The position numbers were made by a program, and so were the translations under genes. A DNA stretch of 64,000 nucleotides from contig OZ025693.1 in NCBI GenBank assembly GCA_964019335.1, forward strand, positions 248,001 to 312,000, read 5' to 3'. Under the pieces are notes generated by a model. The model was not told where the DNA came from. It searched no databases and worked only from the letters and a program-made list of their open reading frames with translations. Below, one piece after another: positions 4,086 to 52,514 of the stretch. Within the stretch, counting starts at the first letter, position 1; each line of letters opens with the position of its first letter. This stretch comes from Diplonema japonicum (Eukaryota; Protista; Euglenozoa: Diplonemea).

Positions 4086-7000
4086 TCACGCCACAAGTCT
4101 TTGCTTCAAAAGGGCAGCATGCAAGATACGAGAGGCCAGCTGCTGAACCTCATTGGGGGTGGATTGGAGAAGTTCCTCATGGGTACGGACGCACTTAACA
4201 CCCCAGACCAACGGTGTGGACTGCTTCATGCCGACAAGCGTGAACCCCCTTACAGTGGCTGCTGCCATGTATTCGAAGTTTGAAACGTCTCCCTGCACCA
4301 TGGTGCCGAGGAGGCAGATGACATCCATGTTGGTCGTCTTGGAGATCTGGGCGGCGGTGTAGGGGAGCTCGTAAGTCCCTGGGACGACTTCTTCCGTGAT
4401 GTTGTTGATCTTGACACCTGCATCGAGGAGTGCGCCTCTGAGTTCCTCCAGCACGGCAAGCACCTGGTTCTCGTTCCACGACGTCCTCACTAGGCAGACC
4501 TTCAGGGACTTCGCTTCCGCTGTTGTGACTTCTCCCACCTTCAGCAGTTTCCCCTTTACAACCTTGCCCTTCCTTGTCCCAAGCCCCCTGCGCATGCACG
4601 CCATGTGCAGTGCCGACATGGCCAATGAGTAGTGCAGCTCGCTGCCCTTCTCTGCCCTTTCCCTAGCTTGTTCCACCGTGTGGCACGTCAGAACCCCGAA
4701 CAGCGTCGGGACAGAGTGCTTGATCCCAACCTTTTGTGTGATTTTTCATTTCATTTTTTTTGTAGCACACCTCTTGCAGTCCGAAGCTTGACGCCTCACA
4801 CGCTGTGTCGAAGCGTGCAGTTGTGTCCTCGATAAGAACGCCTTGTTGTTGTTGTTATTGTTGTTGTTGGTTTCATACCGACTGCGATGACTGACATCAC
4901 GTTGCTCTCCTCGATGACCTTGCTGGCGGCGTGCGGGAGGTCGAACGACGTGGGCACATATTGCGTGATGATGTTCGCCTCGGTGAGGCCTGCCGCCTTG
5001 AACACGCTGGTGATCCCCTCAACCATCTGGTCGACAAGCTGGATCTCCTCATCGGAAGTCGCTACAATCCCGATGCTCATGTTCTTCGCCTCCGTGACAG
5101 AGGGAGCCTTCAGGGTGCGTGGGATATCCTTCACAAGTTCCCCAGCAAGGGCGGACCTCAGCTCGCTAGGAGGGATCTCTCTGGTCTCAACGGCTTCTAA
5201 CTTCTTGATGGAGGTCTTCTTGTCGCTGGTGTAGCGGTGCAGCATCGCCATGTGGATCGCAGACATACCAAGCGACTCGTGCAGCACGCTCCCCTTGCAT
5301 GCGCCTTCCCTCGCTTGTTCTACAGAGAAGCATGTCAGCACACCGAAAAGCATCGGCACACCAGTCTTCTCCTGGGCCTTCAGGATGCCGTGCGATGCCG
5401 CCTGGCAAATGTACTCGAAGTGCTTGGTGTCGCCCTTGATGAGGATGCCCATGCACAGCACGACGTCCACGCCCTCACTCTCCGCCATCAGCTGTGCGCC
5501 GCTCGGGAGCTCGAAGGACCCGGGCACCACCTTCTCGACGATGTTCGCACTTTCGATGTTGTTGCTCTTCAGCACCTCAGCCACGCCGTCGCGCATCTGC
5601 TCCACCATCGATTCGTTCCACGCAGTGCGCACAATGCCCACTCTGATAGCCTTCGCTTCTTCCTTGCTGGGGAGCTTGAGCGTCTTGGGGAAGTCCATGT
5701 CCTTGATCACCGGGCTGGCATCCACAGCGGGAGGTACCCCGAAAACCAGCGGCTTGTACGCGGGCTTGCTCACACCCAGTTCCTTAGCTAAGGCCGCTTG
5801 GTGCAGCACAGAGAGGGCCAGGGGGACAGGGATCTCCTTTGCACGGGCTGCGAGATGCTCGTCATTCACGCAAAGCAGCATCCCAGACAGGATGGGGCAC
5901 GAGTGGCGCAGCTGTGACTCAACAATGCCCAAGGCCTCGGACAATGCCACGTACTCGAAGTGTGCAGTGTTGCCCTTGATGAGCACACTGCATGTCACGA
6001 CGACATCAGCACCACCCGCAGCCGCCTGCGACGCTGCGTAGGGGATCTCAAAGGAGCCTGGCACCCTGATGACGGTGATGTTCTCCTCCTTCACGTAGAA
6101 GTCACCCAGAGACTTGGTGAGCTCGTTGACGATGTAGTCCACGACACCCTGGTTCCACGTCGTGGCAATAATGGATACCTTCAGGTCCTTGGCAACCTCC
6201 TTGGAAGGCAGGTACACCTTGCTGGAGAGCTCCTGTGCCTGCGTCTCGTTAGCGGCGCAGGACTGCGTCATGGCGTTGGCCAGGGGAGACGAGGGGAGGG
6301 TGCTTTCCTTGGGCGGGAAGCAAGGCATCACACCTCCCTTGGGAGGCGAAACAGTGTGAGACTGGCATGCAACCTGGAGAGTAGACAGGGCAAGGGAGTA
6401 GGCAAGCTCTCCGCCCTGGCTGCACCTGTCGATGGCCATCTGCTTGTGCTCACAGGCAAGAACACCGAAAAGCACAGGGGTGTTGTGCTCGATCTGGACA
6501 AGATTGAGCCCGTTGGCAACAGCCGAAGACATACAAGTGAAGGCTTGGGGAACATGCCCGCCCTTGATGGTGATACCGAGGCACAGGATGGCGTCAACCT
6601 TTCCAGTTGCCGCGATGGCCTGGGCCGCGAAGGGCAGGTTGTTGGCACCGGGGACGATAACCTCGCTGATGTTCTCTTCAACAACGCCAGCCTCAAGCAG
6701 CTCAGAGACGATCTGCTTCTGGAGGGAGTGGAGGGGGACACCGAACCACACAGTCTTCACAATGGCGATCCTGAGCTTAGGCATCAGGGCAACGTGAGAG
6801 CGATCCGACAGCTGAAGGCTGGACTTCACACCAGAAACAGTGGAGCCAAGGCCGCCCTCTCTGAGTCTCGTCTCGTGGTTGCGCTTGTCGGTCAGGTACC
6901 TTGTGTTGAACTTGTTGTGCTCGCACAGCAGTGGCACTGTTTCTACCTTCAACTTACCCTTCAGGGCGCTGAGAGCCTTCTCTTTAAGAGGGCTGTTGGT

Positions 7001-8263
7001 CAGCAGCTGCACAGTGCTCTTGACGCCAAGTGCAAGGATGATGTCAGCACATGCGTCGAAGTTCCTGAGGTCCTCCTGGAAGCCCAGCTCCCTGTTGGCT
7101 CTGTACGTGTCGAAGCCCTTCGCCTGCAGTTGGTAAGCGTGCATCTTGTTGACAAGACCGATGCCCCTACCCTCGTGTCCTGTCATGTAGATGACGACAC
7201 CGACGCCTTTGTCGCTGATGTGGCTGAAAGCCTGGTCGAGCTGGTCACCACAGTCACACCTCATGCTGCCCATAAGGTCGCCCGTGAAGCACTCGGAATG
7301 GATCCTGACAGGGACAGGTTCCTTGGAAGCCGCCACGTCGCCCACAGTCATGATTATGTGCTCGTTTTGTGTGACGTGCTCCTTGAAGCAGACCATGTTC
7401 CATGTGCCGTGGAACTTCCCGTTCCTCGTGATGGGGATGGTGCACTCAGCGACGCGAACGACACCACTGCTCGGGGTAAGGAACCTGAGAGGCTTCTTGT
7501 AGAGGTAGTTTGAGAGGGCGTCGATGGTGATGCACGGGATGTTCAGCCTCCACCCGAGCCTCTTGCAGTCGTCAAGGCGCTTCATGCTGCCGTCTTTGTT
7601 GACAAGCTCGCCAATAGAACCGACAGGGAACTTGTTGGCAAGCCTGCAGAGGTCGACGGAAGCTTCGGTGTGGCCACGACGATCGGAGATACCACCACGC
7701 TTAGCACGGAGGGGGAAGATGTGCCCTGGACGACCGAAGTCAGACCCACGTGCCTTGGGGTGGGCAAGGGCGTGGAAAGTGATCATACGGTCGTAAGCGC
7801 TGACACCGGTAGTGAGACCACTGTTGCCTTCCTTATCGCAAATGTCAGGGATGAGACCGGAGTCAAGGGGGACAAGGGGCTTCAAATCAGTGGTGACGGT
7901 GAAAGCGGTACCCTTGGAGTCGGTGTTCACCACAAGCATAGGGTCCAGGCCGAGTTCGTTTGCCCTGTCCTCCGTCATAGGCGCGCACAGGATTCCCGTG
8001 GTCTCGTTGACCATCATGGCGACCATTTCCTCCGTCAGGTCCTGAGCGGGGACGATGATGTCTCCTTCGTTCTCCCTGTCTTCGTCGTCCATCACGATCA
8101 AAGGGCGGCCATTCCTAAAGGTCTCGATAGCTACTTCAATAGACGCCATCGGCCTGTTGATGATGTGGTTGTCGTACATCTTCGATATCGCAGCGCCCAC
8201 AGCGGCCATCCCCGCAGCAGCTGCGAGCTTTGTCTTCAGATCGTTATTGTTCATCGCACTCAT
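4086..8263 (-). CDS. ribBA-ribH: Riboflavin biosynthesis fusion: RibB (DHBP synthase) - RibA (GTP cyclohydrolase II) - five lumazine synthase (RibH) domains; 3 exons, ~1366 aa
   Basis: RibB motifs DDEDRENEGD and RRGHTEA; RibA motifs RIHSECFTGD..SMRCDC and EGRGIGLVNK; five RibH-type VPG(A/S/T)xELP-like repeats. GT-AG introns 4842-4878 and 4731-4770 join ORF 4796-8383 to ORF 4086-4676 in frame (IAVGVLIEDTTARFDTACEASSFGLQEVGIKHSVPTLFGVLTC). Confidence 0.93.
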
Positions 8264-40760: not shown

Positions 40761-43700
40761 TCACACTATAATTCTCGCCTCGCGCCTCCAGTGTCGTTTT
40801 CGGAAGGAGCTAGTTGGCTGCACCTCCACGTTGTACGCACTGTCAAAGTAGTCAGCATACCACCTAGGTTTTGTTTCCCCTTTCTTCCCTCTAAAATTGC
40901 AAGCATACCATCCGTGATCGTCCCCGCCTTCTGTTTCCCACTCCGAGCACCACTTGTACCCTACGGGGGGCTTTATAACGGTCTTCACAGGTTTCTTTTC
41001 TCTTCCGCTTTTGTCGCTCCACTTCCAGCAGTCCATCAAGCCCAGGTCGGAAGACCACCCCGTCCCATGAAGGTACTTTTGATTCTCGGTTACCTCTATG
41101 AGCGACAGGGAAACGGGGCCTGGTTTAGCAGACCGGGGCGAGACGTCGGATTTCTGTTTGAGGCGGTTGGCCAGCTTGGCTGCGACTCTTCGCTCCTATT
41201 TGGTTTTTTTTTTTTTTTTTTCCCTCTCTTTTTTCTTTTCCCATACCAGCGCGATAAAACTCGATTTCGTCCCCGAGCGTGGTGAAGTTTCAGTAATCGG
41301 TTCATCAACTGCATCTGCAGCAGGCCGCATGGCACGCAGCCAGCGCCGCCTCCTTACGAAGTCCAGCTCATGGCGATGTTTGTGGAACGCGCTTTTAAAA
41401 TCGACGGCATAAAGCCACCCGTCCTTGCCACCATTCGTTGCGTCCGTCGTCCAAGAGCTGGCCCAGACCATTCCCTTAGGGAGCTGAATTCTGGACTTCG
41501 GTTCGGTTTTCTTGCCGCGTTGGTCGGACCAGTTGGTGCGATCGACAAAGGGAAGCATTCCATTAGACCACCCGACCCCTATGTACCATCGTTGGTTCTC
41601 ATAAGTCTCTTTCCACACGATCCCTGCAGACTGCCGCTCTGGGTCGTAGTACTTCGGGTCGCGCACCCTTGCTAGCGATGACTTCAGCATCACTGTTTTT
41701 TCGATCAGTGACGCCGCGTCTGAAACCCCATTCAGAACCCCACTGACGGGCTTTGCAACTGCACCCACCAACCCTTGCCCTGCACCTTTTAGCCCACCCA
41801 TGGCACCGCCATGCAAGGCACCGACTATGGGGTCCTTTAGCAGGCCAACAACCCCGTCAAAAACACCCTTCACCGCCGTCTCCAAAGGATTGTTCTTCTC
41901 GGCCTTTGCATCGACCGCCCGACGTGTTCTCCAGTCCTGGTCAGCCACTGATTCAATGGCCCGTGCGGAGCCCCTTGTCACCCCTGCCACCGTCCCGAAG
42001 ATCCCGCCCACTGATTTTCCAACAAGGGATCCTGTACCCTTCAGTATCCCGGTTCCGAACTCTACTGGAGACCGTGACAGTCCCATTGCGGGTAGGACCA
42101 CGAAGTCGCGGACGCCAGTTGTGATGTTTGAGAACAGCCCCAACGGGTTCCCAATGGCTTGGATGCGGCCCACCATGCCTGCGAGATTGTGAGAGGCTTC
42201 GAATTGCCGTGCGTAGTTCGTGGCCAACCTATGCAGCAGCATTCCAACATTGTCCCTCCCATGGTTCACGGCCACCTTGTCGAGCGTTACCTCGCTGTCC
42301 TTCACGCTGGGAAGTGCCAAAGCGAGGTTCCCCAAGCCCAGGCCATCGCGGTAAGGGTCTCTTCCTTCCTTCAGCCTGTCTACTGTTAGCGTGAAGTGGA
42401 TCTCACCAAATGTTAGAGCATCGAAGTAGATGCGTCTTGCAAGGATGCCGGATTCCACCACACACTTTTCCGTGTAGTGCTCTGTGGAGTAGCATGTTGC
42501 CTGCGCGTACCTCAGCCCCAACGCCACGTTGACCTCTCTTCTGAACTCGAAGAACTCCCACAGGAACCTGTCGCCGATGGAAACCTTGATTGGGTCGACC
42601 TCGAGGCCCACATGCTGGTAGTGCAGCAGGTTGGAGTTGTTCAGTCTGCGGAGCGATGTGAAGTGCAATGCTGGCCTGTCTTCTTTGTTGTCAAGAATGG
42701 ACACGACAACGGGGAACAGCGGCTGCGACTCGCTCATATCGTCCAGCTGTAAGCGTTGCAGGTTGAGCTGTATCATCTCTTGACCGTTGCCACGGTATAC
42801 TTGTGTGAACAGCCCGTGTAGGGTGAGGCAAGCCACTTCACGACGCTCCTCTTGTCTGACCAATGACACTGACAAATGTTTCACATCTATCTTTGTATTC
42901 AGCACGCTGATGTCCGACTGCGATGCAGCAAGCTTCAACACCTGCTCGCCCATGAGGGGATCTGTGTACGCGATTAGCTCCAGGACACGATCGTCCTTTG
43001 TAGGGCTCAAATGGCAGTATACATCAGAGGCAGGAAGCGACACCACTGCCTCCTGACGCCCACCCAGACCAAACACATCTATCGGTGCAGTCACCACGCC
43101 GCCCGCCTCAAACTGTATCGTTTGCTTCCCTGACACATCCTCCCAGCACAACGGTGCTGTTTCCCTCTGCTTCACATCCACTGCCGTGCCCTCATGGCCC
43201 GTTTGCCAGAATTTCAAAATGTACGGTGTTCTGTTCACAACCAAGAAGGGCGCGATCGTGGGCACGATCAACACGTACAGCGTTGTGTCCTCCTTGATCG
43301 ACACTCTGATGTGTACTTTCTTCCCATCCTTCTGCACCACGTGCAGCACCACATCTCCCACTTGGTTCAAACACACGCTGCAGCTCTTCTCTGCCCCAGC
43401 ACCGAAGCAAACAAACTGGCTTAAAACCCCTGTCTGTTGGCTATGATACGGAACAGGGGTATTTGGGGGCAGCTCCACAACGCCTGAGGAGGAGATCAAG
43501 TCCATGGAGAACGACGTTTTGTTGAAGATGACCCACCTTGGGAGAAGCTCCACTACGCGTGTGCGGTAGCCCTGCTCGCCTCTTGAGAAAGCTGTTCTGT
43601 ACGCTATGGCCAGCGAGTGGCCCTCCTTCTGTGGGTCGGTGAGGTATGCTAAGCCTTCGGCTCCAAGAATGTGCAACTGCAGCTCCTCCGACACAGCATC

Positions 43701-46700
43701 GGTGCCTGTGATCTGTAGCGTTACTTCGAGTTTCTGTTCACCCAACAGACGAGGCGACACCAGGACCGGCGAGTCAGCCTTGCCGGGAAGCTCCACCGAA
43801 GCACCGCAGCAGTCGAGTGTGAGGTTGAAGAGAGTGTGGTTCACGATCCAGAAGCGGGAGGTGAGATGGGCCTCCCTCCTTGAGAGGTACGTAGTGTCAA
43901 CCCAGACAGGGAGGACGTTGCTGGTTTCACCCAGTAGTCTTGTGTTGATCACGTGGTGTTCGGTTCTGTCGCGCGTCTTAATGCACGTGCGTTCAGTACT
44001 AGCAAGATTCTCGCCTCCCGGCTGGACGAATGACGTGGACATGTACAGCGACTGCGTAGGATCTACGGTGGTGAGATGCACGGCTTGCGAGGTTTCAAGA
44101 AGGGTACTGGCAAGTGCAGCCCCTGCTGTGTCCGAATAGAACTCCACGCTCATCGCACGCCCGGTAAGGTTGGTGACAGAGAACGGGGGGCAAATCTTCA
44201 GCTCCGTCCTATCGGTGACGTCGTCCCTGTCGACAGTGACGACGAAGTAGTTGTCTGCGTCAGGTGCTAACAGCGGGACCTCAATCGAGCCACCTCTCGT
44301 CAAGCAGCTGTGCACGAGCTCGCTATACGGCAGGGATGGGATGGCTGCCTCCGTAGTGTTGGGGTCGTGGTACACCTTCATCTTCTTATCGAGCATGTGG
44401 TCCGGGACAGAGAGGCAGCCCCCACTGGGCAAAGTTCCCAGCTCGCCCAAAACGACAGGTATCTGAAGGGCGTTGTGCACTGAGACGGACGTCTTGACGG
44501 AGATCACTTTTACGCCGCCGTCAAGTTTGAGATCTGCCACAACACCGCAGGATAGCACAGACAAGCCCAGCCTCGAGGTGTTGATAGTGTACACAACGTC
44601 GTCGTACGGCGTGGAAATGCCGATGGAAGAGGCACTCATGGAAGACGCCTTGCCCATGGCGTCGATGGTGGAGGTCAGGCCCTTCTTGCCTTGGGTGTAC
44701 TGGATGGCACATGGCAGGGTGTTGTCGATTCTGGTAGGATACTTCTGCTGCGGGTCAGCGCTGAAGGAGGAGGTGTCCGTGGTAGGGCACTGCAATAACT
44801 CGCTGTGCTTGGTAGTGTCCCACAATGAAACCGCCCGCTTCACACTCTGCAAGTACGACGCAGACATGACCAGGTCAAGACCTCTTGCAGCTGTGATAGT
44901 GACCTTTGCAGATGCCTCTTCAACGAAGTTGTAGTCGATGCCTACTGGTGCTTCGTCAAGGACGGGCTCCCATTCACATCCATGTTGGTTATAGTGGTTA
45001 ACAAGAATGTGGAAAGACGTCCTGAGGTGGAACACAGCAAAGTTGAAGGCAATATCGCGTATTTTTACCTCGAACAGCGGCAGGTTGACGTCGTTCTGCG
45101 AGTCGTCAATGATGCACACACCTACCACAGGCACCTGCACCTCCATCTCGATGTTCTTTCGTCGCCGTGCCTTCACAAAAGGCCTCGTGGTGCTGCCAGC
45201 GCCAAGCGCTGCAATGATCCTTGCGATGAACACCATGTCGCTGTGGGCCACGCGCACCGATATGTTCGAACTGATAATTTCGATGGCTGAAACTGCGGCT
45301 TTGCCCTTGATAAACGCATCGAGACGGAGCCTCTCTACAAGGTACGCGCTGTTGTCTTCTCTCGAGACTTCGAGTTTAGATATCATGACGCTCCCGAAGG
45401 TCTGCAGAGTGCTGCCATCCACGGCTTGCCGCTTGCTCCCATCGCCATGCAAGTCTACCGCAAGCATCAATCCCCTGTCACCGTCTGAGAGCTTGCCCCT
45501 CAGAGTGAGGTCCGTCGTTAGCTTCACAACTCGCCCACTGCGCTGTGTTAACTCATCGCTCACATCCTCTTCCTTCTCTTGCTTCGGATTTTCGTACACT
45601 TCAAATTTGTTTCTCAAAGGATCGGCCATCAGCCCTGCAGACGGGCCGCCCAAGCTTACATACTCGTGCAGCGAGGATTCATGAGATAACTTGAAGACGC
45701 ATTGCAGCACAACAAGCACGACACCATCCTCTATGTGGATTGGCTGCCTCTTCTTGTCCTGCATCTTGACAAGGTTCACGTTGTACCCGCCACCTTTGAT
45801 TGTGACGGTGTTCTTGTCGGACTTGATCAAGAGCATGGTGTGTTCGCCTAGCTCCAGGTCAGACGTCAGCGTTGTATTGTCTGAAATGGTGATGATAGTG
45901 ACCTGCTTCATGTTGGCAGGCAGGCCGCGTGAAACACGTTCGAAGGGCGCTATCACGAAGTCGGTGACATTCAACCACGTTGACGGGCTGATCGAGAAGT
46001 TCGCCGCTGCTGCGAGTTGCACATTGGTGACAGTTTCACCGACCGCATGTGCCGTTTTCGTTGTGGCGACTAAGCTGCTCGCGTGCAGCATCTCATCAGG
46101 AGCGTCACCTTCGATCCCTCCAGTAGTTGTTACCATGTTCACTTCGAACCTGCCTTCCGTGGCCATCGAGTCCCAACACCCGCTGACACCATGCGCACTC
46201 GACCTCAGTATCAACGGAGGCGAAAGGTCGACAGGTACAGCAACCGTGACAGATACAACAGGGCACTTGAAGGAGCATTTGAAGGACAGAGGTGTCTCGT
46301 CGTTGACGGGTTGTTGTACTGCTTGTGGTTTCCCCCATTTCCCCGGTACTTGCAGGAAGTTGTGACTTAAGATGGTCACGCACTCTTGCCACACGTCTTG
46401 AGAGAGTTTTACCGCCATGGGGCTGATGTCGGTGGTTGCTTCGATCGATGAGTGGTAGATATTCCTCTTTCCTGACCCACGTGCATGAAGAGGTGACTCT
46501 AGCATGTGGACTTCGTCCCCGTTCATAGCGCACGAAATGAGGCAGTCGTCCACGGCAGCCACAAGGCAGTCTCCCTCATCCTCAAGGTGGTTCTCGAGGG
46601 TCATGAGCCCGAGGTCGATGGTGAGGTGCGACGTGGCGTCGGGCCTATTCGGAATGATGAGCACAGGGTGCTCGACACGCAGCGAGAGGCACATCGCAGA

Positions 46701-49700
46701 CACCGCCGCAGCACGTGCCTCGTGGGATATGATGGTCTGCGTCTCTTTAACAGCTTCCGCCACATGCCCTTCAACAACAGACTGCAGCTTTTGCACAAAC
46801 GGCAACAAGAACAGAAACCTCACAGAGTGCAACGTGCAGCTCAGCTTATGCGTGTACATCCTGCTCTTAATGGACTCGTAGGTGAAGCTAATCACGCTCC
46901 CTTCCTCTGGCTTCGCCAAGCCGAGTACTTCCAAGCTCGTCTCCTCGTCGTGCACTTGCACATTGCCCAAATTCCCCATGACACTCATATGGCCATTCGC
47001 CTGCAGGCACTGCAACTTGCACTCCCCGACCTTCACCCTTGCCAATGTGCTTACCATGGTTTCCAGCAAGTTAATGTCGATGTGCGTGAGCTTCATTGTC
47101 AGCATGCCATGCTTCGTGCTTAGGTGCGGTCTCAAAAATGACTCGTTCCTGCTGAAGGATGGTGACTGTATCAAAGGGAGTGCCTCGTCGGGCTCCCGCG
47201 GTATAAGTTGCAAGAGTTCGTTCAACCTCTTGGGGAAGACGTGCAGCACGAGTGGAGCAAGAATCACCTCAACACGCGGTTTTGAGGGCGGTACTGACCA
47301 GACCTGGGTGACGAAAGTCGCCTTGGAGCCGTCCGCGGGTTTTAAGATATGCGTGGCCTCTCCTTCCCCTTGGAGATCCTTCACGGCAAGGACAGCCACC
47401 TCGATGGTGGCGTCTGTCTGCCCTGAGCCACGCTGGTTCTGAACGCGTGTCTGAATATTCTCCATGGACATTGAGACTGTCTCCTCGCCGTTGTTAGCTT
47501 CAAAGATGACGCACAGCGCAGGGCACGACGCGTCAATGCTGATCGTGCCTGCAGCCTCTTCTTCTTCATCCTCGAAGCTACTTCTCACAGACACCTGGTC
47601 CTCCTGCATCGGGTACAACGGGCTGCTCGGGATGTTGAGCTCGTTGATGTTTTTCTGCACGACGTCCTTTATAAACAACCATGCATTGGGACTGAGGTGG
47701 AGCGCGAACGAGGGAAGGGATGTTTTCAGCATCAGATCGGGAGTCTCGTCACAAATTACCACAACGCGGGAGACCGCCACCAACCCTGTGGTGTCCTTCA
47801 GCAGGACGGCACGCTTCTCTTGGTTGCACATCAGTGACAATGAAGTGAACTCCACATCAATGCAGTCCAGGATCCTGCCGTCCTGTTCTCTGATCGAACT
47901 GTTCACCGCGAGTCTCTCAAGTTGTAAGTTCAAGCAGTGCGCCGAGTCAAGCGCAGCAGGTATGACCACAGTGGGGTTGTCCCATGATATGTCAATCTTG
48001 CTCACAGTGCCCTTTTGAACGCTTTGTGTTGCAGCCCGTGCCGCGGACTCCTTACCCTTCTCCATGAGGCTGTGTATGGGGCTGTTCAGCACCAACGACG
48101 CTACCTCGTCCCAGAAGCGGTGTTTGTAAACAACACAGAAGCCGCCTATCCTGCCTTCAACATCGCTACTGTGGCGCACCGTCGTTCCAGGAGGAACGTA
48201 GTCTGTGTGAGAGCCTACACCGTGGTAGTTCGTGACTTGGAAGGACACGAGCTTCTCGGAACCAGCGGTGTCTAGAACCTGGATGTAACGGTCGTCTTCT
48301 TGAGCTGTTCGGGCATCTGTAGCGCACAGCCTAGCGAGGGACGTGTTAATGGTCGTCGACGTGGTTGTCTTCTCAAACTTCAAAAGCAGGTCGTGTGCAG
48401 AGCACAGCATCAGGTCGGTGGAATCCACAGCCAGCAGCATGGCTGAAACGCGTGCAATGTTGAAATTCAAGACGGTGCCTTCAGAGACTTGCTGCTTGGC
48501 GTTCTGGATTGCCTTGGAGTGCGTGGTGACAGAGGACATGACATTGACGCTTTCGGTGTTGTTGAAGAAGCAGAGCAACTCAGACCATGCGTCGGGCAGG
48601 ACAGTGAACAGCAGCGTGTTCAGCGACACGTCACCCTGTTTGATCTCACTGCTCTCTGTGCGTATGGACACAGCGAAGAAGTCGTCCTGTGCCTTGGCAT
48701 CACTACCACATTCAAGCAAAGGTTTGTTCGTGCTGTTGACGATGCTCAGTGCGTGCAGGGTCACGTCGACCTGCTTGTCGCCGTATGTGTCCGACTTGAT
48801 GTGTGGGTGCAACTGCTTCCCGTTGATACGGTGCGCAGGGAGCTGGATGTTGATGTCCTCGAAGCAAAGGTCAATGTCCTTCGGTTCATGGTGCGTGGTT
48901 ACCACAGGTGGCACGCCGAGAAGGTTCAAGCAAAACACAGACAGCACAGCAACATAGTCGGCCTGCGTCAGGTTGATGGAGAGGGAGGGTGCGTGGAGCT
49001 TCACGCGCAACCCTGCTGCCTTCTGCGGCTCACCTTCGATGCTCAACAAGCTAGAGATAACTAACTCAAAACTCGTTTCCTGCAGCACGTTGGGAGTAGT
49101 GTCTGAGAGGATGCGGATGCCGGTGTAGTTCATAAATATCTCATTCCACACAACAGATTCGTCAGCTGTGTTGGTCTCGAAACGCATGTCGGTGTTTAAA
49201 ACCAGAGAACCAAGGTGCACCTTCAACGACCCGAGCTGTGAAGGCTCCTCAGGCAGGTAAGCTAGTGGGTCGTGGAGCTTCAGAGACACTTTGGGCGGTC
49301 CTGAAGGCGGCGGAGGTGAGTGGAGGAACATATCGCTCACACAGAGCAACCGGTGCACGTGCCCTGCTTTGAAGAAATCGAGCATCGCATCGAACTGCGG
49401 GAAGTAAAAAACGATGCACGGTTGCCAAGCTTCAATCGACAGCAGCGCAGCCCACGTGCTGTGGGTGCCATCGTCCCCCGGAGTGTCAACCTTGATGGTC
49501 AAGGGGTTCGATGGGTTGTTGTAGGACACAACCTGCTGCGTCGCCAGAGGCTGGTAGAGGTCACGCAGCTCCGCTTCTTCCAAGTACGTCTCGACGTTCA
49601 TTCCAACAGTGTAGCTGGTTATAGTCACATTCGCCCCGATTCCTGCAATGAGCAGGCGGTCTCTATCTTCGTCAAGCACGAGCAACCGTGCTTGCTTCAT

Positions 49701-52514
49701 CATAATCTTCACGACCGCTTCAGGCGCGCCTCTGTTCAGAACCTCCATGACAGCAGGTGCCTCACGTGTTGCTTTGTCAAATTCGTTCAAGGATCTCCAT
49801 ATGAACTCTACGCAATGCACGAGCGGGTTGCCAACAGCAACGTCTAGCAGGTCGAAGCGACACACAATCGAAACAGGTTGGAAGTCCTCTTTGAGGATGA
49901 CAATGCCCACAGGTACCCCTGTCCCTGCTCCTGCCCCGTATGATGTTTTGATGAAGGTAACATTGTCCTCAACGAGAGCAGTCGTTGCGTGGATGTCGCT
50001 TGTGTCGACAGCGATGTGCGACCTGCTGTCGGAGAGCGTCGCCGTGATGACAGTGCCCGAGGCAGAGACGATGCAGGGCACCGTCTCGTCCTCCACACGG
50101 ACGACAACACTCTTCAGAGTGAACGTCAGTTTGTTCGTAAGAACAGGCGCGGGGGCTATCTTCAGTGAGGTTGTCATTGACTGGTCGGCCAGTGTCTCGT
50201 CCCAAGATTCGCTCTCTTTCTCTTCTACTGCCGTTCGCTCGAACGCTTTACACAGAAGCCCTACCACCCGGACATCCTTTAAGCTCGCAGCTACTTCAAC
50301 CTCCTCGCAAATGCACTCCACAGTGACGTACGGGGTAGAAGGCTTGGGAACATGCGCCCTTCTGGCAGTGCCTTGTATGGCAACAGGTTTTAGAAGATAC
50401 CTCTTTGAAGGGGATTTTGTGAGGTAGTCCTTTATATGCCCGACGGTGATGTAAGCTGAGTCGAAGTTCAAGAGGAATGTGTCAGAGGTGACATGGCTGG
50501 GCTGCAGCATGCTGGTGTCGCTCAAGACAAGCCTGCCGCAAGAGACAAGCACCATGGGTGCCATCTCAGACGTCGTGTCGTCCATCAGAATGAGGTTCGG
50601 TGCCACGATATCTGTAGAGAGCGCCCAGTGTTTCTTGTTCACCTCCTTTAGCTCCGCCTTGGCGTACTTCAAGGCTGTCCTTCCGAGGTTTTTAACGAGC
50701 CTCAGCTCGCTCCGCATAGGTGGGATGAGGAACTCCTTTAGTGAGAACAAGGCCTGGGGGTCGCAGAAAAACGTCATTGGGGCTAGATCCGAATGCACTG
50801 CCAGGTCGAGCTCTGGTCTATCAGCAGGCCGCTGCTCCACTCGAAGCTTCAGCAGCGGCATGTTGTTTGCGTTGTTACTCTGCACCAGGTGCGGGAACAC
50901 AGCGTCCCTCGAAGGAATCTTCACTTCGAACGAATGCAAGGAGATGTCTGCCTTGACCCCTCGTTCCCTGCCAGCGGTTGTCAGCTCGAAGTTGTTGAAG
51001 GCGCCCTTTACGTCGCCCAAACTCTCCACCCCTGTGAGGGTTAAACTGCACCCGGTCATTGTCAGTGTTAGTTGCCATAGTACAGCATTAGCGTCGATCG
51101 GAAGCTCGTCGGTTTCTTCTTTATCGGTGTCGGCTTTAGAGTCGTCAGGGGTGGGGGAAGGGGTGGGGTTTTGCTGTCGTTTGTTCCGCCAGCTCAGTAA
51201 GGTCCCTCCCTTTTTCGGGGAGGTGGTTTTCGATCTATTATATACGGAAGCACGGCACGCCTTGATGGTGGCTAGAGGAAGGCAGGTCTGCAGCATGTCG
51301 TAGCTAGCCTGGTCCGCTTCGGACAGCGGGTCGTCAGAAATAAGTTTGCTGTGAAGAACTTCATAGCGTTCGATGTCAACTGGCAACGGGGATGGTGCCG
51401 GGTAATCAGTCTCGGTGGGGTCTGTACCGGACATAACGGAACAGATAGCATACCGCCACCATGCAGCGGCGTCGGCGGTGTAACCAGTGTTCTGCCGCCG
51501 TCGCTGCACATCAGGATTACGACCGAGCGTGGGACGGCAGAATGGAGGCGGGCGGACGGACAACTGGTAAGGTTCAAACCCGTGCTTCACCTCCATGGCG
51601 ACATCGATCAACGCCGAGTACTGCTCACGCGTGAATGACAAATCAATGCTAGAAAGATGCACCGACGACGCAACCGGAGGAAGAGACCCCCGGTACCTTT
51701 GCATATCTATCCTAACACCACACGTCACCGGTTGCAAAACAACGCTCGACTCATCAGGTTTGTCAAAGTTCACAACACCATGCCCCTGCGCCAATATGGC
51801 TCTGTTGCGAGGCGAGCTTGTACAGTCATTGACAGGCAAGACAGGTATAATGTAGAAGGAAAGATCCTGGACATGAAGCAGACGGTATATCCGAGGATCC
51901 TCCGGGTTCAGCTGAAATTTCTCAGCCCAATCCTTCCCTGTTGTGGCAAGCCCAACGCTCCGCATAGTAACTCCCATTGCCTTCCCGGTGTATGGTTGTG
52001 AGATGCAGTCTTCGTACCGAAGGTGTACGTTATTCACGACGATTTTGAGGTTTTCCAAAATGGCGCCTTTTAGTTTGGCGATCCAGCCTGACGATGTAGA
52101 GGTTGTTTGGTCAGAGATGCGGGAGGCCTCCCATGCTGCGAGGTTGGCTTGTTTTCTGCGTTGAGCAACCTCGACACCACTCCATTTCTTTCCTTTCAGA
52201 GGGAGTACCAAGCCTTTAACCCCTTCCAGTGTTACCACCACGGACTCTTTTTTCAGGGATGACCAGGGGACCTTGAGGTGTAGGCTGGTGACATTGCCCC
52301 ACATTAGGGCCCATGGCATTCCTAGTCCGTCTTGTAGGAGGCCGTCGACAGCTTCGGCCTTCAGCCTCACGTTGTGGATGACAAGGTCGCCTTGCCATAG
52401 TTTTAGTTTAACTTGTTTTTTATCGAGCCCGTCTAAGTATTGTCCAAGGTATTCCAAAATAAACGCGGTTACTCTTCCCTTGATGTCTGGGAGGACTTTG
52501 TCAAAGATTCCCAT
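40761..52514 (-). CDS. VPS13: VPS13-family lipid transfer protein (~3900 aa) ending in two dysferlin (DysF/Pex24-like) domains
   Basis: Chorein N-terminus (LEYLGQYL...LWQGDLVI...VHLRYED), VAB-like repeats, Gly-rich C-terminal region GLVGAVAKPVSG. Intron 41196-41246 joins a last exon with a second ENQ..W...GW.Y....R.R.W.R domain. Confidence 0.92.

What the first reader, a model, noticed from the sequence alone, without database searches (positions are those of the whole stretch)
4086..8263. Single-chain riboflavin 'megasynthase': RibB-RibA fused to five tandem lumazine synthase domains (a covalent pentamer)
Seen: after removing two tiny GT-AG introns (4842-4878, 4731-4770), one ~1366-aa frame encodes RibB (~8149-7500), RibA (~7460-6890) and five RibH domains (~6778-6362, 6187-5785, 5650-5236, 5083-4590, 4508-4095). 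Four of the five are preceded by a related linker (PSKEVAK, PSKEEAK, PSVTEAK, TTAEAK), pointing to internal duplication. Established: lumazine synthase works as a homopentameric ring (or pentamer-based capsid) and condenses the RibB product DHBP with a pyrimidine derived from the RibA product; RibBA fusions are common. Inference: exactly five copies means the whole ring is encoded in one polypeptide, tethered 1:1 to the enzymes that feed it, possibly allowing DHBP channelling. I know of no described natural RibBA-(RibH)5 architecture. Automated ORF calling splits the gene and would miss it.
Basis: partly seen in the sequence, partly recalled or inferred. Interest (0 to 1): 0.95.

Follow-up and report, generated by a model that had tools for sequence, protein, structure and literature searches.

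The report
Single-chain five-domain lumazine synthase fusion
A marine protist (Diplonema japonicum) encodes one 1366-residue protein that joins the first two riboflavin-pathway enzymes to five diverged copies of lumazine synthase, an enzyme that normally works as a ring of five identical subunits, so the ring is apparently written into a single chain; no paper we could search describes this.

Summary
On the minus strand, 8263-4086, three exons separated by GT-AG introns of 37 and 40 nt encode RibB, RibA and five complete lumazine synthase (RibH) domains. An independent Diplonema japonicum transcript ORF of 1366 aa equals the three exon translations exactly. The window is therefore D. japonicum, and the splicing is real.

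The same RibBA-(RibH)5 protein occurs in seven diplonemids and in the free-living kinetoplastid Papus ankaliazontas. A euglenid and many Amoebozoa have RibBA plus one RibH. No other protein with more than two RibH domains ranked among the 150 listed hits out of 1.84 billion cluster representatives.

Each domain position is its own clade, with conserved, position-specific changes at active-site residues. Domain 3 is canonical. Domain 4 has lost the substrate-stacking Trp and the His. Domain 5 has lost the phosphate-binding Arg.

AlphaFold packs domains 1-3 confidently (pTM 0.88) but leaves RibBA loosely tethered (pTM 0.57).

Best reading: an intramolecular, asymmetric pseudo-pentamer with roughly two to four working sites. 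Ring closure is inferred, not shown, and DHBP channelling has no support. The five-domain fold could not be run. This is a new variant of a known kind, present in databases (labelled only "RibBA") but found in no searchable paper.

The parts
4086..8263 (-). Whole coding region of the RibB-RibA-(RibH)5 gene: three exons and two introns, with the stop codon at 4088-4086.
   Evidence: The product is identical to the D. japonicum transcript ORF P0001 (1366 aa).
4879..8263 (-). Exon 1 (aa 1-1128 plus the first base of the Gly1129 codon).
   Evidence: Exact substring of P0001, residues 1-1128.
4842..4878 (-). Intron 1: 37 nt, GTATG...AAG, phase 1, inside RibH domain 4.
   Evidence: Three other diplonemid gene models break at the same position. 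It fits the published D. japonicum intron statistics.
4771..4841 (-). Exon 2: 71 nt, encoding aa 1129-1152, the middle of RibH domain 4.
   Evidence: Its 23-aa translation is an exact substring of P0001, residues 1130-1152.
4731..4770 (-). Intron 2: 40 nt, GTGTG...AAG, phase 0.
   Evidence: P0006 ends exactly at this site in another species.
4086..4730 (-). Exon 3 (aa 1153-1366 plus stop): the C-terminal third of domain 4, linker 4-5 and domain 5.
8159..8245 (-). N-terminal Ala/Gly-rich hydrophobic segment (aa 7-35), predicted helical. Possibly a membrane anchor or targeting signal.
   Evidence: Conserved in D. ambulator, D. papillatum and Papus. AlphaFold predicts a helix at residues 7-35. 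Function was not tested.
7499..8149 (-). [quoted passage not shown] It includes a lineage-specific insertion of about 19-20 aa at aa 128-147 (nt 7882-7823).
   Evidence: PF00926 at 222 bits. TIGR00506 at 198.7 bits against a cut-off of 177.45. Aligns with solved RibB structures and with M. tuberculosis RibBA 4i14; the acidic loop DDEDRENEGD and the GHTEA motif are present.
6869..7423 (-). RibA domain (GTP cyclohydrolase II, aa 281-465).
   Evidence: PF00925 at 171.8 bits. NF001591 at 204.4 bits against a cut-off of 148. The Cys-x10-Cys-x-Cys zinc motif is aligned with 4i14.
6782..6868 (-). RibA-to-RibH tether (aa 466-494), partly disordered.
   Evidence: pLDDT is below 50 for residues 470-484, and pTM is 0.57 for RibBA plus domains 1-3.
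6365..6781 (-). RibH domain 1 (aa 495-633). Trp22 equivalent kept; Asn23 to Phe; Glu58 to Asn; a 2-aa insertion at the His88 loop; Phe113 and Arg127 equivalents kept.
   Evidence: TIGR00114 at 79.2 bits. Folded with high confidence.
6191..6364 (-). Linker 1-2 (58 aa), with conserved motifs and ending in LPSKEVAK.
   Evidence: The first half is disordered and the second half is confidently modelled.
5792..6190 (-). RibH domain 2 (aa 692-824). The substrate-side residues are canonical in this species. Phe113 to Ser, Arg127 kept, and the alpha4-alpha5 loop is shortened.
   Evidence: TIGR00114 at 78.5 bits.
5654..5791 (-). Linker 2-3 (46 aa), the least conserved of the four, ending in LPSKEEAK.
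5243..5653 (-). RibH domain 3 (aa 871-1007), the most canonical copy. Trp, Asn, Gly-Ser-Phe-Glu and His are all present in all seven diplonemids.
   Evidence: TIGR00114 at 119.9 bits, above the 84.6 cut-off.
5087..5242 (-). Linker 3-4 (52 aa), with a strongly conserved motif (LRSALAGELVKDIPRTLKAP in this species).
4596..5086 (-). RibH domain 4 (aa 1060-1197), interrupted by both introns. The substrate side is degenerate (Trp22 to Asp, Gly55 to Thr, His88 to Arg). Phe113 and Arg127 are kept. It is the best-conserved RibH copy.
   Evidence: The exon pieces score 28.7 and 21.1 bits on TIGR00114.
4512..4595 (-). Linker 4-5 (28 aa).
4110..4511 (-). RibH domain 5 (aa 1226-1359). Trp, Asn, Gly and Glu are kept. 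His88 to Asn is invariant, Phe113 to Trp, there is no Arg127, and the loop is shortened.
   Evidence: TIGR00114 at 72.1 bits.

Best explanation
Shown:
- This is the nuclear gene of Diplonema japonicum for a trifunctional riboflavin-pathway protein.
- It has an N-terminal hydrophobic helix, RibB (DHBP synthase), RibA (GTP cyclohydrolase II), a flexible tether, and five diverged lumazine synthase domains joined by linkers of 28-58 residues.
- It is expressed as one spliced mRNA.

Inferred:
- The five domains fold back on one another into a single pseudo-pentameric ring. The ring reproduces the homopentamer of ordinary lumazine synthase, whose active sites lie between neighbouring subunits.
- Because the subunits are now separate stretches of one gene, they have diverged. 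The ring is asymmetric.
- One interface has lost its catalytic residues on both sides if domain 4's substrate side faces domain 5's phosphate side.
- Domain 3's substrate side, paired with an Arg-bearing neighbour, is a fully canonical site.
- The other interfaces are modified: His to Asn in domain 5, and an altered loop in domain 1.
- About two to four sites are therefore expected to be active. The remaining domains are kept for ring architecture.
- RibBA hangs on a flexible tether. This fixes the stoichiometry at one RibB and one RibA per ring and keeps the DHBP source close to the ring. No defined channel is predicted.

Origin (inferred):
- The ancestor was a RibBA-RibH fusion with one RibH domain, as still found in a euglenid and in Amoebozoa.
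- The RibH unit, together with its N-terminal LPS-type extension, was then multiplied to five.
- This happened before the sampled diplonemids diverged, and probably before diplonemids and kinetoplastids split.
For: - Gene model and splicing: the exon translations equal transcript ORF P0001 exactly, and the introns are typical of the species.
- Domain content: Pfam finds RibB, RibA and five DMRL_synthase stretches. The local HMM finds five complete domains in each of four full-length diplonemid proteins. The missing 3' part lies in separate gene models in three further genomes.
- Exactly five domains also occur in Papus ankaliazontas. That protein is colinear with the window's protein over all five domains at 30% identity.
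- All other RibBA-RibH proteins examined have one RibH domain.
- Each position is a clade, with SH-aLRT support of 100, 98, 90, 100 and 100.
- The catalytically degenerate domain 4 is as well conserved as RibA and domain 1: 64-67% identity at the deepest comparisons, against 57-63% for domains 2 and 3. It is therefore under purifying selection.
- Position-specific residue states are conserved across species.
- The closest solved relatives are the fungal lumazine synthases, the first of which (1c41) is titled as pentameric.
- AlphaFold on domains 1-3 gives pLDDT 85.8 and pTM 0.88, with most linker residues confident. This means a fixed mutual arrangement of the three domains.
- With RibBA added, pLDDT is 85.5 but pTM falls to 0.57 and the tether is disordered.
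- The conservation state of each phosphate-side face matches that of the substrate-side face of the preceding domain in all five pairs, including the ring-closing pair of domain 5 and domain 1. In the opposite direction only three of five pairs match (my inference).
Against: - Ring closure was not computed. Every full-length protein exceeds the 1200-residue limit of the structure tool, and no single reference spans the five domains because of the introns.
- The structure tool returns no coordinates. A high pTM shows fixed packing, not that the packing is the pentamer interface.
- The face-pairing argument rests on five pairs and two possible directions. It depends on alignment around Arg127, where domain 3 has an invariant Lys/Arg two residues earlier.
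- Published mutagenesis, as I recall it, shows lumazine synthase tolerates loss of several active-site residues. 'Dead' sites may keep some activity.
- The Papus domains are so diverged that positional orthology with the diplonemid domains could not be shown. Independent multiplication to five is not excluded.
- There is no protein-level evidence that the chain stays intact.
Confidence: 0.65

Rival explanations
1. The five RibH domains do not close a ring within one chain. They assemble between chains instead, as domain-swapped pentamers, stacked decamers through RibBA dimerisation, or a 60-domain shell made of twelve chains.
For: - The linkers (28-58 residues) are long enough to reach more than the nearest neighbour.
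- RibB and GTP cyclohydrolase II are dimeric enzymes (my recollection for M. tuberculosis RibBA, 4i14, the best solved match). This would bring two RibH blocks together.
- Some lumazine synthases form 60-subunit capsids (review PMC13151069).
Against: - Exactly five domains are kept in eight species across a deep split. That is expected if one chain equals one ring, and not otherwise.
- Conserved position-specific faces imply a fixed neighbour order.
- Adjacent domains 1-3 are predicted to pack on each other within the chain (pTM 0.88).
- The closest solved relatives are the fungal enzymes, the first of which (1c41) is titled as pentameric.
- None of the five alpha4-alpha5 loops carries the capsid-type G(T/G)K(A/H)GN motif. 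The motif is recalled from the literature; the sequences were read.
Confidence: 0.15
2. The protein is a polyprotein precursor. After translation the linkers are cut, releasing RibBA and five different RibH subunits that then assemble into hetero-pentamers.
For: - Linkers 1-2 and 3-4 carry strongly conserved motifs, and each domain is preceded by a similar short motif. These could be processing sites.
- Polyprotein precursors are known in the related euglenids (my recollection: Euglena light-harvesting and RuBisCO small-subunit precursors).
Against: - AlphaFold models large parts of the linkers with high confidence, packed on the domains. They are not modelled as exposed loops.
- The same pre-domain motif occurs in single-domain fusions, where no release of multiple units is needed.
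- Nothing observed requires cleavage.
Confidence: 0.1
3. Some of the diverged domains (1, 4, 5) have taken over another reaction. The obvious candidate is the last step of the pathway, as in the archaeal pentameric riboflavin synthases, which are homologues of lumazine synthase.
For: - Archaeal riboflavin synthase is a pentamer with high similarity to lumazine synthase (review PMC13151069).
- Domains 1, 4 and 5 carry conserved, not random, replacements at active-site positions, and are under purifying selection.
Against: - Each domain scores far higher on the lumazine synthase model than on the archaeal riboflavin synthase model. TIGR00114 gives 72-120 bits for the uninterrupted domains. TIGR01506 gives at most 26 bits for a single domain and 43.2 bits for exon 1 as a whole, against a cut-off of 100.55.
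- Diplonemid transcriptomes are reported to contain all pathway enzymes (PMC7052976). A separate riboflavin synthase is therefore expected.
Confidence: 0.04
4. The locus encodes two separate proteins, RibBA with three and a half RibH domains plus a small RibH protein, or the repeat number is an assembly artefact.
For: - The raw ORFs are in different frames.
- Gene callers produced exactly such split models in three other genomes.
Against: - An independently assembled transcript gives the uninterrupted 1366-aa ORF, identical to the exon translations.
- D. ambulator, F. neradi and D. papillatum proteins are continuous across the same region.
- Removing the introns restores a gap-free alignment of domain 4 with domain 3.
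- The five copies are only about 30-40% identical to one another by eye in the alignment (not computed), and each is conserved by position. Repeat collapse or expansion in assembly is therefore excluded.
Confidence: 0.01

Closest known systems
Homopentameric lumazine synthases of fungi (Magnaporthe grisea 1c41, Candida albicans 2jfb, C. glabrata 4kq6, S. cerevisiae 1ejb, S. pombe 1kyv)
   Same: - Same domain family and fold. Domain 3 matches them at E about 1e-28 to 1e-29, and the modelled domains superpose with target-normalised TM-scores of 0.77-0.90.
- The domains here have the Trp-type substrate-stacking residue and the N-terminal extension.
- They lack the capsid-type loop motif (recalled from the literature).
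   Different: - The fungal enzymes have five identical subunits from one short gene, giving five identical active sites.
- Here the five units are covalently linked and only about 30-40% identical to each other (estimated by eye, not computed). Each has its own conserved substitutions, and several active-site faces are degenerate.
- The block is also fused to RibBA.
RibBA-RibH fusion proteins with one RibH domain (about 600-690 aa): Eutreptiella braarudii, Physarum, Balamuthia, Arcella, Stenamoeba, Ceratiomyxa, Rotaria, Ditylenchus and many metagenomic sequences
   Same: - Same order RibB-RibA-RibH, and the same LP(S/T)-type motif before the RibH domain.
- 43% identity between the window's protein and the Eutreptiella protein over RibBA plus domain 1.
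- This is the likely ancestral state.
   Different: - They have one RibH domain. A ring therefore needs five chains and brings five RibBA units with it.
- Here one chain carries five RibH domains and one RibBA.
Bifunctional RibBA (DHBP synthase / GTP cyclohydrolase II) of bacteria and plants, for example M. tuberculosis RibA2 (4i14)
   Same: End-to-end alignment of aa 40-462 with 4i14 at 309 bits, with the catalytic motifs present.
   Different: - The window's protein has an N-terminal hydrophobic helix, an insertion of about 19-20 residues in RibB, and about 900 additional residues of RibH domains.
- The NCBIfam bifunctional equivalog models score below their full-length cut-offs (429 against 569).
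Whole-pathway fusions (RibD-RibE-RibBA-RibH, about 1000-1150 aa) in Indivirus ILV1 and many metagenome contigs
   Same: These are also long single chains uniting several riboflavin enzymes, including RibBA and RibH.
   Different: - They add different enzymes (deaminase/reductase and riboflavin synthase) and keep a single RibH domain.
- Their oligomeric ring is not internalised.
Trimeric riboflavin synthase (two homologous barrels per chain) and other rings internalised by gene duplication
   Same: The principle is the same: a symmetric assembly partly written into one chain by tandem duplication, which lets the copies diverge. The riboflavin synthase pseudo-two-fold is described in review PMC13151069.
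   Different: - The fold and the reaction are different.
- That case is a duplication to two copies, not a complete five-fold ring.

Membership tests
Lumazine synthase (6,7-dimethyl-8-ribityllumazine synthase; Pfam PF00885, TIGR00114) | Sequence match to the family model above its curated cut-off. | tested here: met
   - PF00885 finds five stretches at 462.5 bits against a cut-off of 26.7 in P0001, which is identical to the spliced product.
- By exon, it finds four stretches in exon 1 and two in exon 3.
- On the stricter TIGR00114 equivalog model (cut-off 84.6), single domains score 79.2, 78.5, 119.9, 28.7 + 21.1 (the two searchable pieces of domain 4) and 72.1. Only domain 3 passes alone.
Lumazine synthase (6,7-dimethyl-8-ribityllumazine synthase; Pfam PF00885, TIGR00114) | Flavodoxin-like alpha/beta fold superposable on solved lumazine synthases. 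| tested here: met
   - The AlphaFold model of domains 1-3 has pLDDT 85.8.
- Foldseek's best hits are lumazine synthases with target-normalised TM-scores of 0.77-0.90.
- Foldseek reports one local match per target, so the fit of each domain was not confirmed separately.
- Domains 4 and 5 were not folded.
Lumazine synthase (6,7-dimethyl-8-ribityllumazine synthase; Pfam PF00885, TIGR00114) | Active-site residues: an aromatic residue stacking on the pyrimidine (Phe22/Trp), Glu58, His88, and Arg127 from the neighbouring subunit (B. subtilis numbering, from the literature). | tested here: inconclusive
   Results:
- The complete substrate-side set is present in domain 3 in all seven diplonemids, and in domain 2 of this species.
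- Arg127 is invariant in domains 1, 2 and 4.
- The set is not met by domain 4 (Asp, Thr, Arg in place of Trp, Gly, His) or by domain 5 (no Arg127, His to Asn).
- It is partly met by domain 1.

The protein as a whole can form at least one canonical composite site. The individual domains are not all catalytic.
Lumazine synthase (6,7-dimethyl-8-ribityllumazine synthase; Pfam PF00885, TIGR00114) | Pentameric ring with active sites at subunit interfaces. | tested here: inconclusive
   - pTM 0.88 for the three-domain block indicates fixed packing of neighbouring domains.
- No coordinates are returned, and the five-domain chain could not be submitted.
- The count of five, conserved in eight species, is indirect support.
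Lumazine synthase (6,7-dimethyl-8-ribityllumazine synthase; Pfam PF00885, TIGR00114) | Catalysis of the condensation of DHBP with 5-amino-6-ribitylaminouracil. | not testable with these tools
   This needs an enzyme assay or complementation of a ribH mutant.
Bifunctional RibBA (DHBP synthase + GTP cyclohydrolase II) | Both domains match their family models, in the order RibB then RibA. | tested here: met
   - PF00926 scores 222 bits and PF00925 scores 171.8 bits.
- TIGR00506 scores 198.7 against a cut-off of 177.45, and NF001591 scores 204.4 against 148.
- TIGR00505 scores 190.3, just under its cut-off of 205.85.
- The full-length bifunctional equivalogs fall below their cut-offs.
Bifunctional RibBA (DHBP synthase + GTP cyclohydrolase II) | Catalytic motifs: the RibB acidic loop and GHTE motif, and the RibA zinc-binding Cys triad. 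| tested here: met
   The motifs DDEDRENEGD, RRGHTEA and HSEC...RCDCG are all aligned with the same motifs of the solved M. tuberculosis RibBA 4i14. Which residues are catalytic is taken from the literature.
Archaeal pentameric riboflavin synthase (TIGR01506) | Match to the ribC_arch equivalog model above its cut-off (100.55 bits). | tested here: not met
   The best score is 43.2 bits for exon 1 as a whole. Single domains score 26.1 bits (domain 3), 14.3 (domain 1) and 14.6 (the exon 1 piece of domain 4), and nothing for domains 2 and 5. The score is always far below the lumazine synthase score.
Icosahedral (capsid-forming) lumazine synthases | The G(T/G)K(A/H)GN motif in the alpha4-alpha5 loop, without insertions. 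The criterion is recalled from the literature on pentameric versus icosahedral enzymes. | tested here: not met
   None of the five loops carries the motif in the alignments. The nearest solved relatives are the fungal enzymes, the first of which (1c41) is titled as pentameric.

The most novel reading that the evidence does not exclude
The ring is a division-of-labour machine. Covalent linkage freed the five subunits to specialise, so that only two or three interfaces still make lumazine. The conserved but non-catalytic interfaces (around domains 4/5 and domain 1) and the conserved linker motifs have acquired new roles. Candidates are docking the tethered RibB for hand-over of the labile DHBP, and binding a regulatory flavin. 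This asymmetric arrangement would have been maintained since before diplonemids and kinetoplastids diverged. It would be a natural example of a homo-oligomeric enzyme ring turned into a single-chain hetero-ring with non-equivalent sites.
Probability: 0.3. Interest if true: 0.75.

Novelty: new variant of a known kind. Interest (0 to 1): 0.62.

Why it matters
Lumazine synthase is a textbook homo-oligomer, forming pentamers and 60-subunit capsids, and is a widely used scaffold for vaccines and nanocages. A natural version with the whole pentamer in one chain would matter for four reasons.

- **Subunit specialisation.** Once the subunits of a symmetric ring stop being identical, they can specialise. 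Here some lose catalytic residues while staying under selection. This gives a direct, testable system for how many of the five sites a ring needs.
- **Evolutionary route.** The route can be dated: one RibH domain in euglenids and Amoebozoa, five in diplonemids and a basal kinetoplastid.
- **Pathway stoichiometry.** The enzyme that makes the labile four-carbon substrate is held at one copy per ring.
- **Protein engineering.** It offers a template for single-chain pentamers in which each position can be changed independently.

It also shows a practical annotation problem. The gene is split by gene callers in three of the four other diplonemid genome annotations seen here. In the fourth it is labelled only 'RibBA'.

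Tried and rejected
1. **The look-up of encoding contigs was closed.** The genomic context and intron structure of the orthologues could only be inferred from where their gene models break.
2. **The five-domain fold was not run.** P0001-P0004 and P0128 are 1291-1377 aa, over the 1200-residue limit. The window has no single reference across domain 4 because of the introns.
3. **The spliced protein was not joined or submitted.** Exons were searched apart, by reference. Whole-protein results come from database protein P0001, which equals the exon translations.
4. **The metagenome scan found no further diplonemid locus.** I scanned for a further, possibly intron-free, diplonemid locus. The only hit was a TARA contig with an ordinary stand-alone 164-aa RibH.
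5. **Positional orthology with Papus stayed unresolved.** In the tree the Papus domains have very long branches and no stable place. Position-specific HMMs give no diagonal pattern; each Papus domain scores best on the generic model or the domain 3 model.
6. **The 'careful' tree search did not finish in the time limit.** SH-aLRT values come from the quick search.
7. **P0127 is not a second multi-RibH architecture.** It has two RibH stretches, but the two repeats are identical and sit on a 1.8-kb contig, so it is most likely an assembly artefact.
8. **Ring direction could not be read from the model.** The tool returns no coordinates. My first reading of the residue pattern favoured one direction. 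The fuller seven-species table favours the other. I report it only as an inference.
9. **Literature searches found no description of the architecture**.

Full report
**What is in the sequence**

The region 4086-8263 lies in a GC-rich (57-58%) stretch flanked by low-complexity A/T-rich spacers. The six-frame listing shows a 1195-aa ORF (8383-4796) and a 196-aa ORF (4676-4086), both on the minus strand and in different frames.

Reading 5100-4560 on the minus strand and translating all three frames shows how the lumazine synthase homology moves:
- It leaves frame 2 after ...VIAVG at 4879.
- It resumes in frame 0 at 4841 for 24 codons.
- It resumes again in frame 1 at 4730.

The two skipped pieces are 4878-4842 (37 nt, GTATG...AAG) and 4770-4731 (40 nt, GTGTG...AAG). 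With them removed, domain 4 aligns without any gap to domain 3.

**Splicing is confirmed by an independent transcript**

A protein search with exon 1 returned P0001, a complete 1366-aa Trinity ORF. Its source accession is EP01064_Diplonema_japonicum.

The translations of exon 1 (1128 aa), exon 2 (23 aa) and exon 3 (214 aa) are exact, consecutive substrings of P0001. Only the Gly encoded across intron 1 lies between the first two. Exons were searched apart by reference, and whole-protein results were obtained with P0001.

The window is therefore nuclear DNA of D. japonicum. Both introns fit what is published for that species: median intron length 41 nt, 98.3% GT-AG, 5' splice site (G)/GTATG, and an unusually A-rich 3' part (PMC12621601).

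**Domain content**

Pfam finds DHBP_synthase, GTP_cyclohydro2 and DMRL_synthase, the last with four stretches in exon 1 and two in exon 3. It finds five stretches in P0001 at 462.5 bits. NCBIfam agrees.

A local HMM delimits five complete RibH domains at aa 495-633, 692-824, 871-1007, 1060-1197 and 1226-1359.

The RibBA half aligns end to end with the solved M. tuberculosis RibBA (4i14, 309 bits). The acidic loop, the GHTE motif and the zinc Cys triad are in place. There is also a lineage-specific insertion of about 19-20 residues in RibB.

**Distribution**

Seven proteins in the 5.8-billion-sequence collection match the RibH5 region at comparable length, and all are diplonemid-type. They are:
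- D. japonicum, D. ambulator and Flectonema neradi (transcripts).
- D. papillatum (KAJ9467862.1, named only 'RibBA').
- Three unnamed ENA genome models.

The three ENA models end at exactly the two intron positions. Their missing 3' parts, the end of domain 4 plus domain 5, are separate 203-207-aa models on contigs of the same lengths.

I also ran an exhaustive HMMER search of 1.84 billion cluster representatives with domain 3. Proteins with several RibH domains should rise to the top of that ranking. Besides the diplonemid cluster, it listed only two such proteins:
- P0128: 1291 aa, five stretches, RibB + RibA + five RibH.
- P0127: two identical repeats on a 1.8-kb contig, taken as an assembly artefact.

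P0128 is from Papus ankaliazontas (PhM-4), a free-living prokinetoplastid. It aligns colinearly with the D. japonicum protein over all five domains at 30% identity.

The euglenid Eutreptiella braarudii has the same fusion with a single RibH domain. So do many Amoebozoa, a rotifer and a nematode.

The simplest history is a one-domain fusion, multiplied to five before diplonemids and kinetoplastids split. The pathway was later lost in parasitic kinetoplastids, which are known riboflavin auxotrophs (PMC7052976). Positional orthology between Papus and diplonemid domains could not be shown, so two independent multiplications remain possible.

**The five copies are old and individually conserved**

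In a tree of RibH domains, each position forms one clade across diplonemids, with SH-aLRT support of 100, 98, 90, 100 and 100. Domains 2+5 group together, as do domains 3+4.

Identity between D. japonicum and the most distant species is 64-67% for domains 1 and 4, and 56-63% for domains 2, 3 and 5. It is 30-59% for the linkers. Linkers 1-2 and 3-4 nevertheless contain strongly conserved motifs.

It was therefore part of the duplicated unit.

**Active-site residues**

The positions known from the literature are Phe22/Trp, Glu58 and His88 on the substrate side, and Phe113 and Arg127 contributed by the neighbouring subunit. That the sites lie between adjacent subunits is stated in review PMC13151069.

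The seven-species table shows the following:

| Domain | Substrate side | Phosphate side (given to the neighbour) |
|---|---|---|
| 1 | Trp kept; Asn23 to Phe; Glu58 to Asn/His/Asp; 2-aa insertion at the His loop | Phe/Tyr113 and Arg127 kept |
| 2 | Canonical in Diplonema and D. papillatum; degenerate in the four other species | Ser at 113; Arg127 invariant |
| 3 | Fully canonical in all seven | Arg127 variable; invariant Lys/Arg two residues earlier |
| 4 | Invariantly degenerate: Trp to Asp, Gly55 to Thr/Asn, His to Lys/Arg/Ser | Phe113 and Arg127 kept |
| 5 | Trp, Asn, Gly and Glu/Asp kept; invariant His to Asn | Phe113 to Trp; no Arg127 |

Every domain scores far better as lumazine synthase than as archaeal riboflavin synthase.

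Suppose each domain's substrate side is paired with the phosphate side of the next domain, cyclically. The conservation states then agree in all five pairs:
- Domain 3 with 4: both canonical.
- Domain 4 with 5: both dead.
- Domain 2 with 3: both variable.
- Domain 1 with 2: both invariantly modified.
- Domain 5 with 1: both conserved.

In the opposite direction only three pairs agree. This is my inference from five pairs. If it is right, the conserved pair of domains 5 and 1 argues for ring closure.

**Structure prediction**

Domains 1-3 (window 6826-5219, 536 aa, nine-sequence alignment) give mean pLDDT 85.8 and pTM 0.88. Only residues 176-196, in linker 1-2, are disordered. The three domains are thus predicted in a fixed mutual arrangement, and much of the linkers is ordered. 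Foldseek matches the model to solved lumazine synthases with target-normalised TM-scores of 0.77-0.90.

RibBA plus domains 1-3 (1015 aa, 55-sequence alignment) keeps pLDDT 85.5 but drops to pTM 0.57. The RibA-RibH tether is disordered at residues 470-484. RibBA is therefore predicted to be loosely tethered, not docked, and a defined channel for DHBP is not supported.

The tool gives no coordinates. The five-domain chain could not be submitted, both because of its length and because no single reference spans it. Ring closure remains unproven.

**Comparison with what is known**

Known:
- Lumazine synthase domains, RibBA fusions and RibBA-RibH single-domain fusions all exist in databases.
- Diplonemids are reported to make riboflavin de novo (PMC7052976).

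Found in no paper in the searchable library:
- A natural chain with five lumazine synthase domains. A 2026 review of the pathway mentions no fused or tandem lumazine synthase.

I therefore rate it a new variant of a known kind. The sequences are public, but the architecture and its asymmetry appear undescribed.

**Limits**

- There is no protein-level or enzymatic evidence.
- The contig is not human.

Noticed in passing
window 8159-8245 (-), aa 7-35 of the protein: An Ala/Gly-rich hydrophobic N-terminal segment is predicted as one long helix. It is conserved in D. ambulator, D. papillatum and Papus. The F. neradi ORF starts downstream of it and lacks the first 38 residues. It could be a membrane anchor or a targeting signal for a compartment.
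   Followed up: partly
window 7823-7882 (-), aa 128-147: An insertion of about 19-20 residues lies inside the RibB domain and splits the Pfam match in two. It is present in diplonemids and much shorter in Papus. It is absent from Eutreptiella and from solved RibB structures.
   Followed up: partly
window 5087-5242 and 6191-6364 (-), linkers 3-4 and 1-2: These two inter-domain linkers carry motifs conserved across four diplonemid genera, for example ...GELVKDIPRTL.AP before domain 4. Parts of linker 1-2 (linker 3-4 lay outside the folded construct) are modelled with high confidence, so the linkers are probably more than passive tethers.
   Followed up: partly
proteins P0051-P0078 and P0146: Many metagenomic proteins of about 1000-1260 aa unite the deaminase/reductase (RibD), riboflavin synthase (Lum_binding), RibBA and one RibH in a single chain. 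One is from Indivirus ILV1, where it is named only 'deoxycytidylate deaminase'. That is nearly the whole riboflavin pathway in one polypeptide.
   Followed up: no
protein P0128 (Papus ankaliazontas): In the prokinetoplastid orthologue all five RibH domains lack the His88 equivalent. The RibB acidic loop is altered (DD-NAESEGD), and RibA has a 10-residue deletion. The protein may be losing activity or working differently.
   Followed up: partly
protein P0127 (ENA contig of 1789 bp): This is a 327-aa protein with two identical canonical RibH repeats. It is most likely an assembly artefact of a short contig, not a real tandem lumazine synthase.
   Followed up: partly
window 859-30390, mostly minus strand: The neighbouring genes are unrelated eukaryotic genes on the same strand: DUF2045, a MORN-repeat protein, TTC39/Iml2, an adenylate/guanylate-cyclase-domain protein, phosphoglucomutase and a transketolase-like protein. 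They are separated by short A/T-rich low-complexity spacers, consistent with euglenozoan head-to-tail gene arrays. There is no riboflavin gene cluster.
   Followed up: partly
window 41196-52514 (-): A single uninterrupted ORF of 3772 aa. It was not examined.
   Followed up: no
L001 (TARA_B100000963_G_scaffold351616_1), 4956-5450: The only metagenome hit is an ordinary stand-alone 164-aa lumazine synthase in a compact, bacterial-looking gene row. It is unrelated to the diplonemid architecture.
   Followed up: yes
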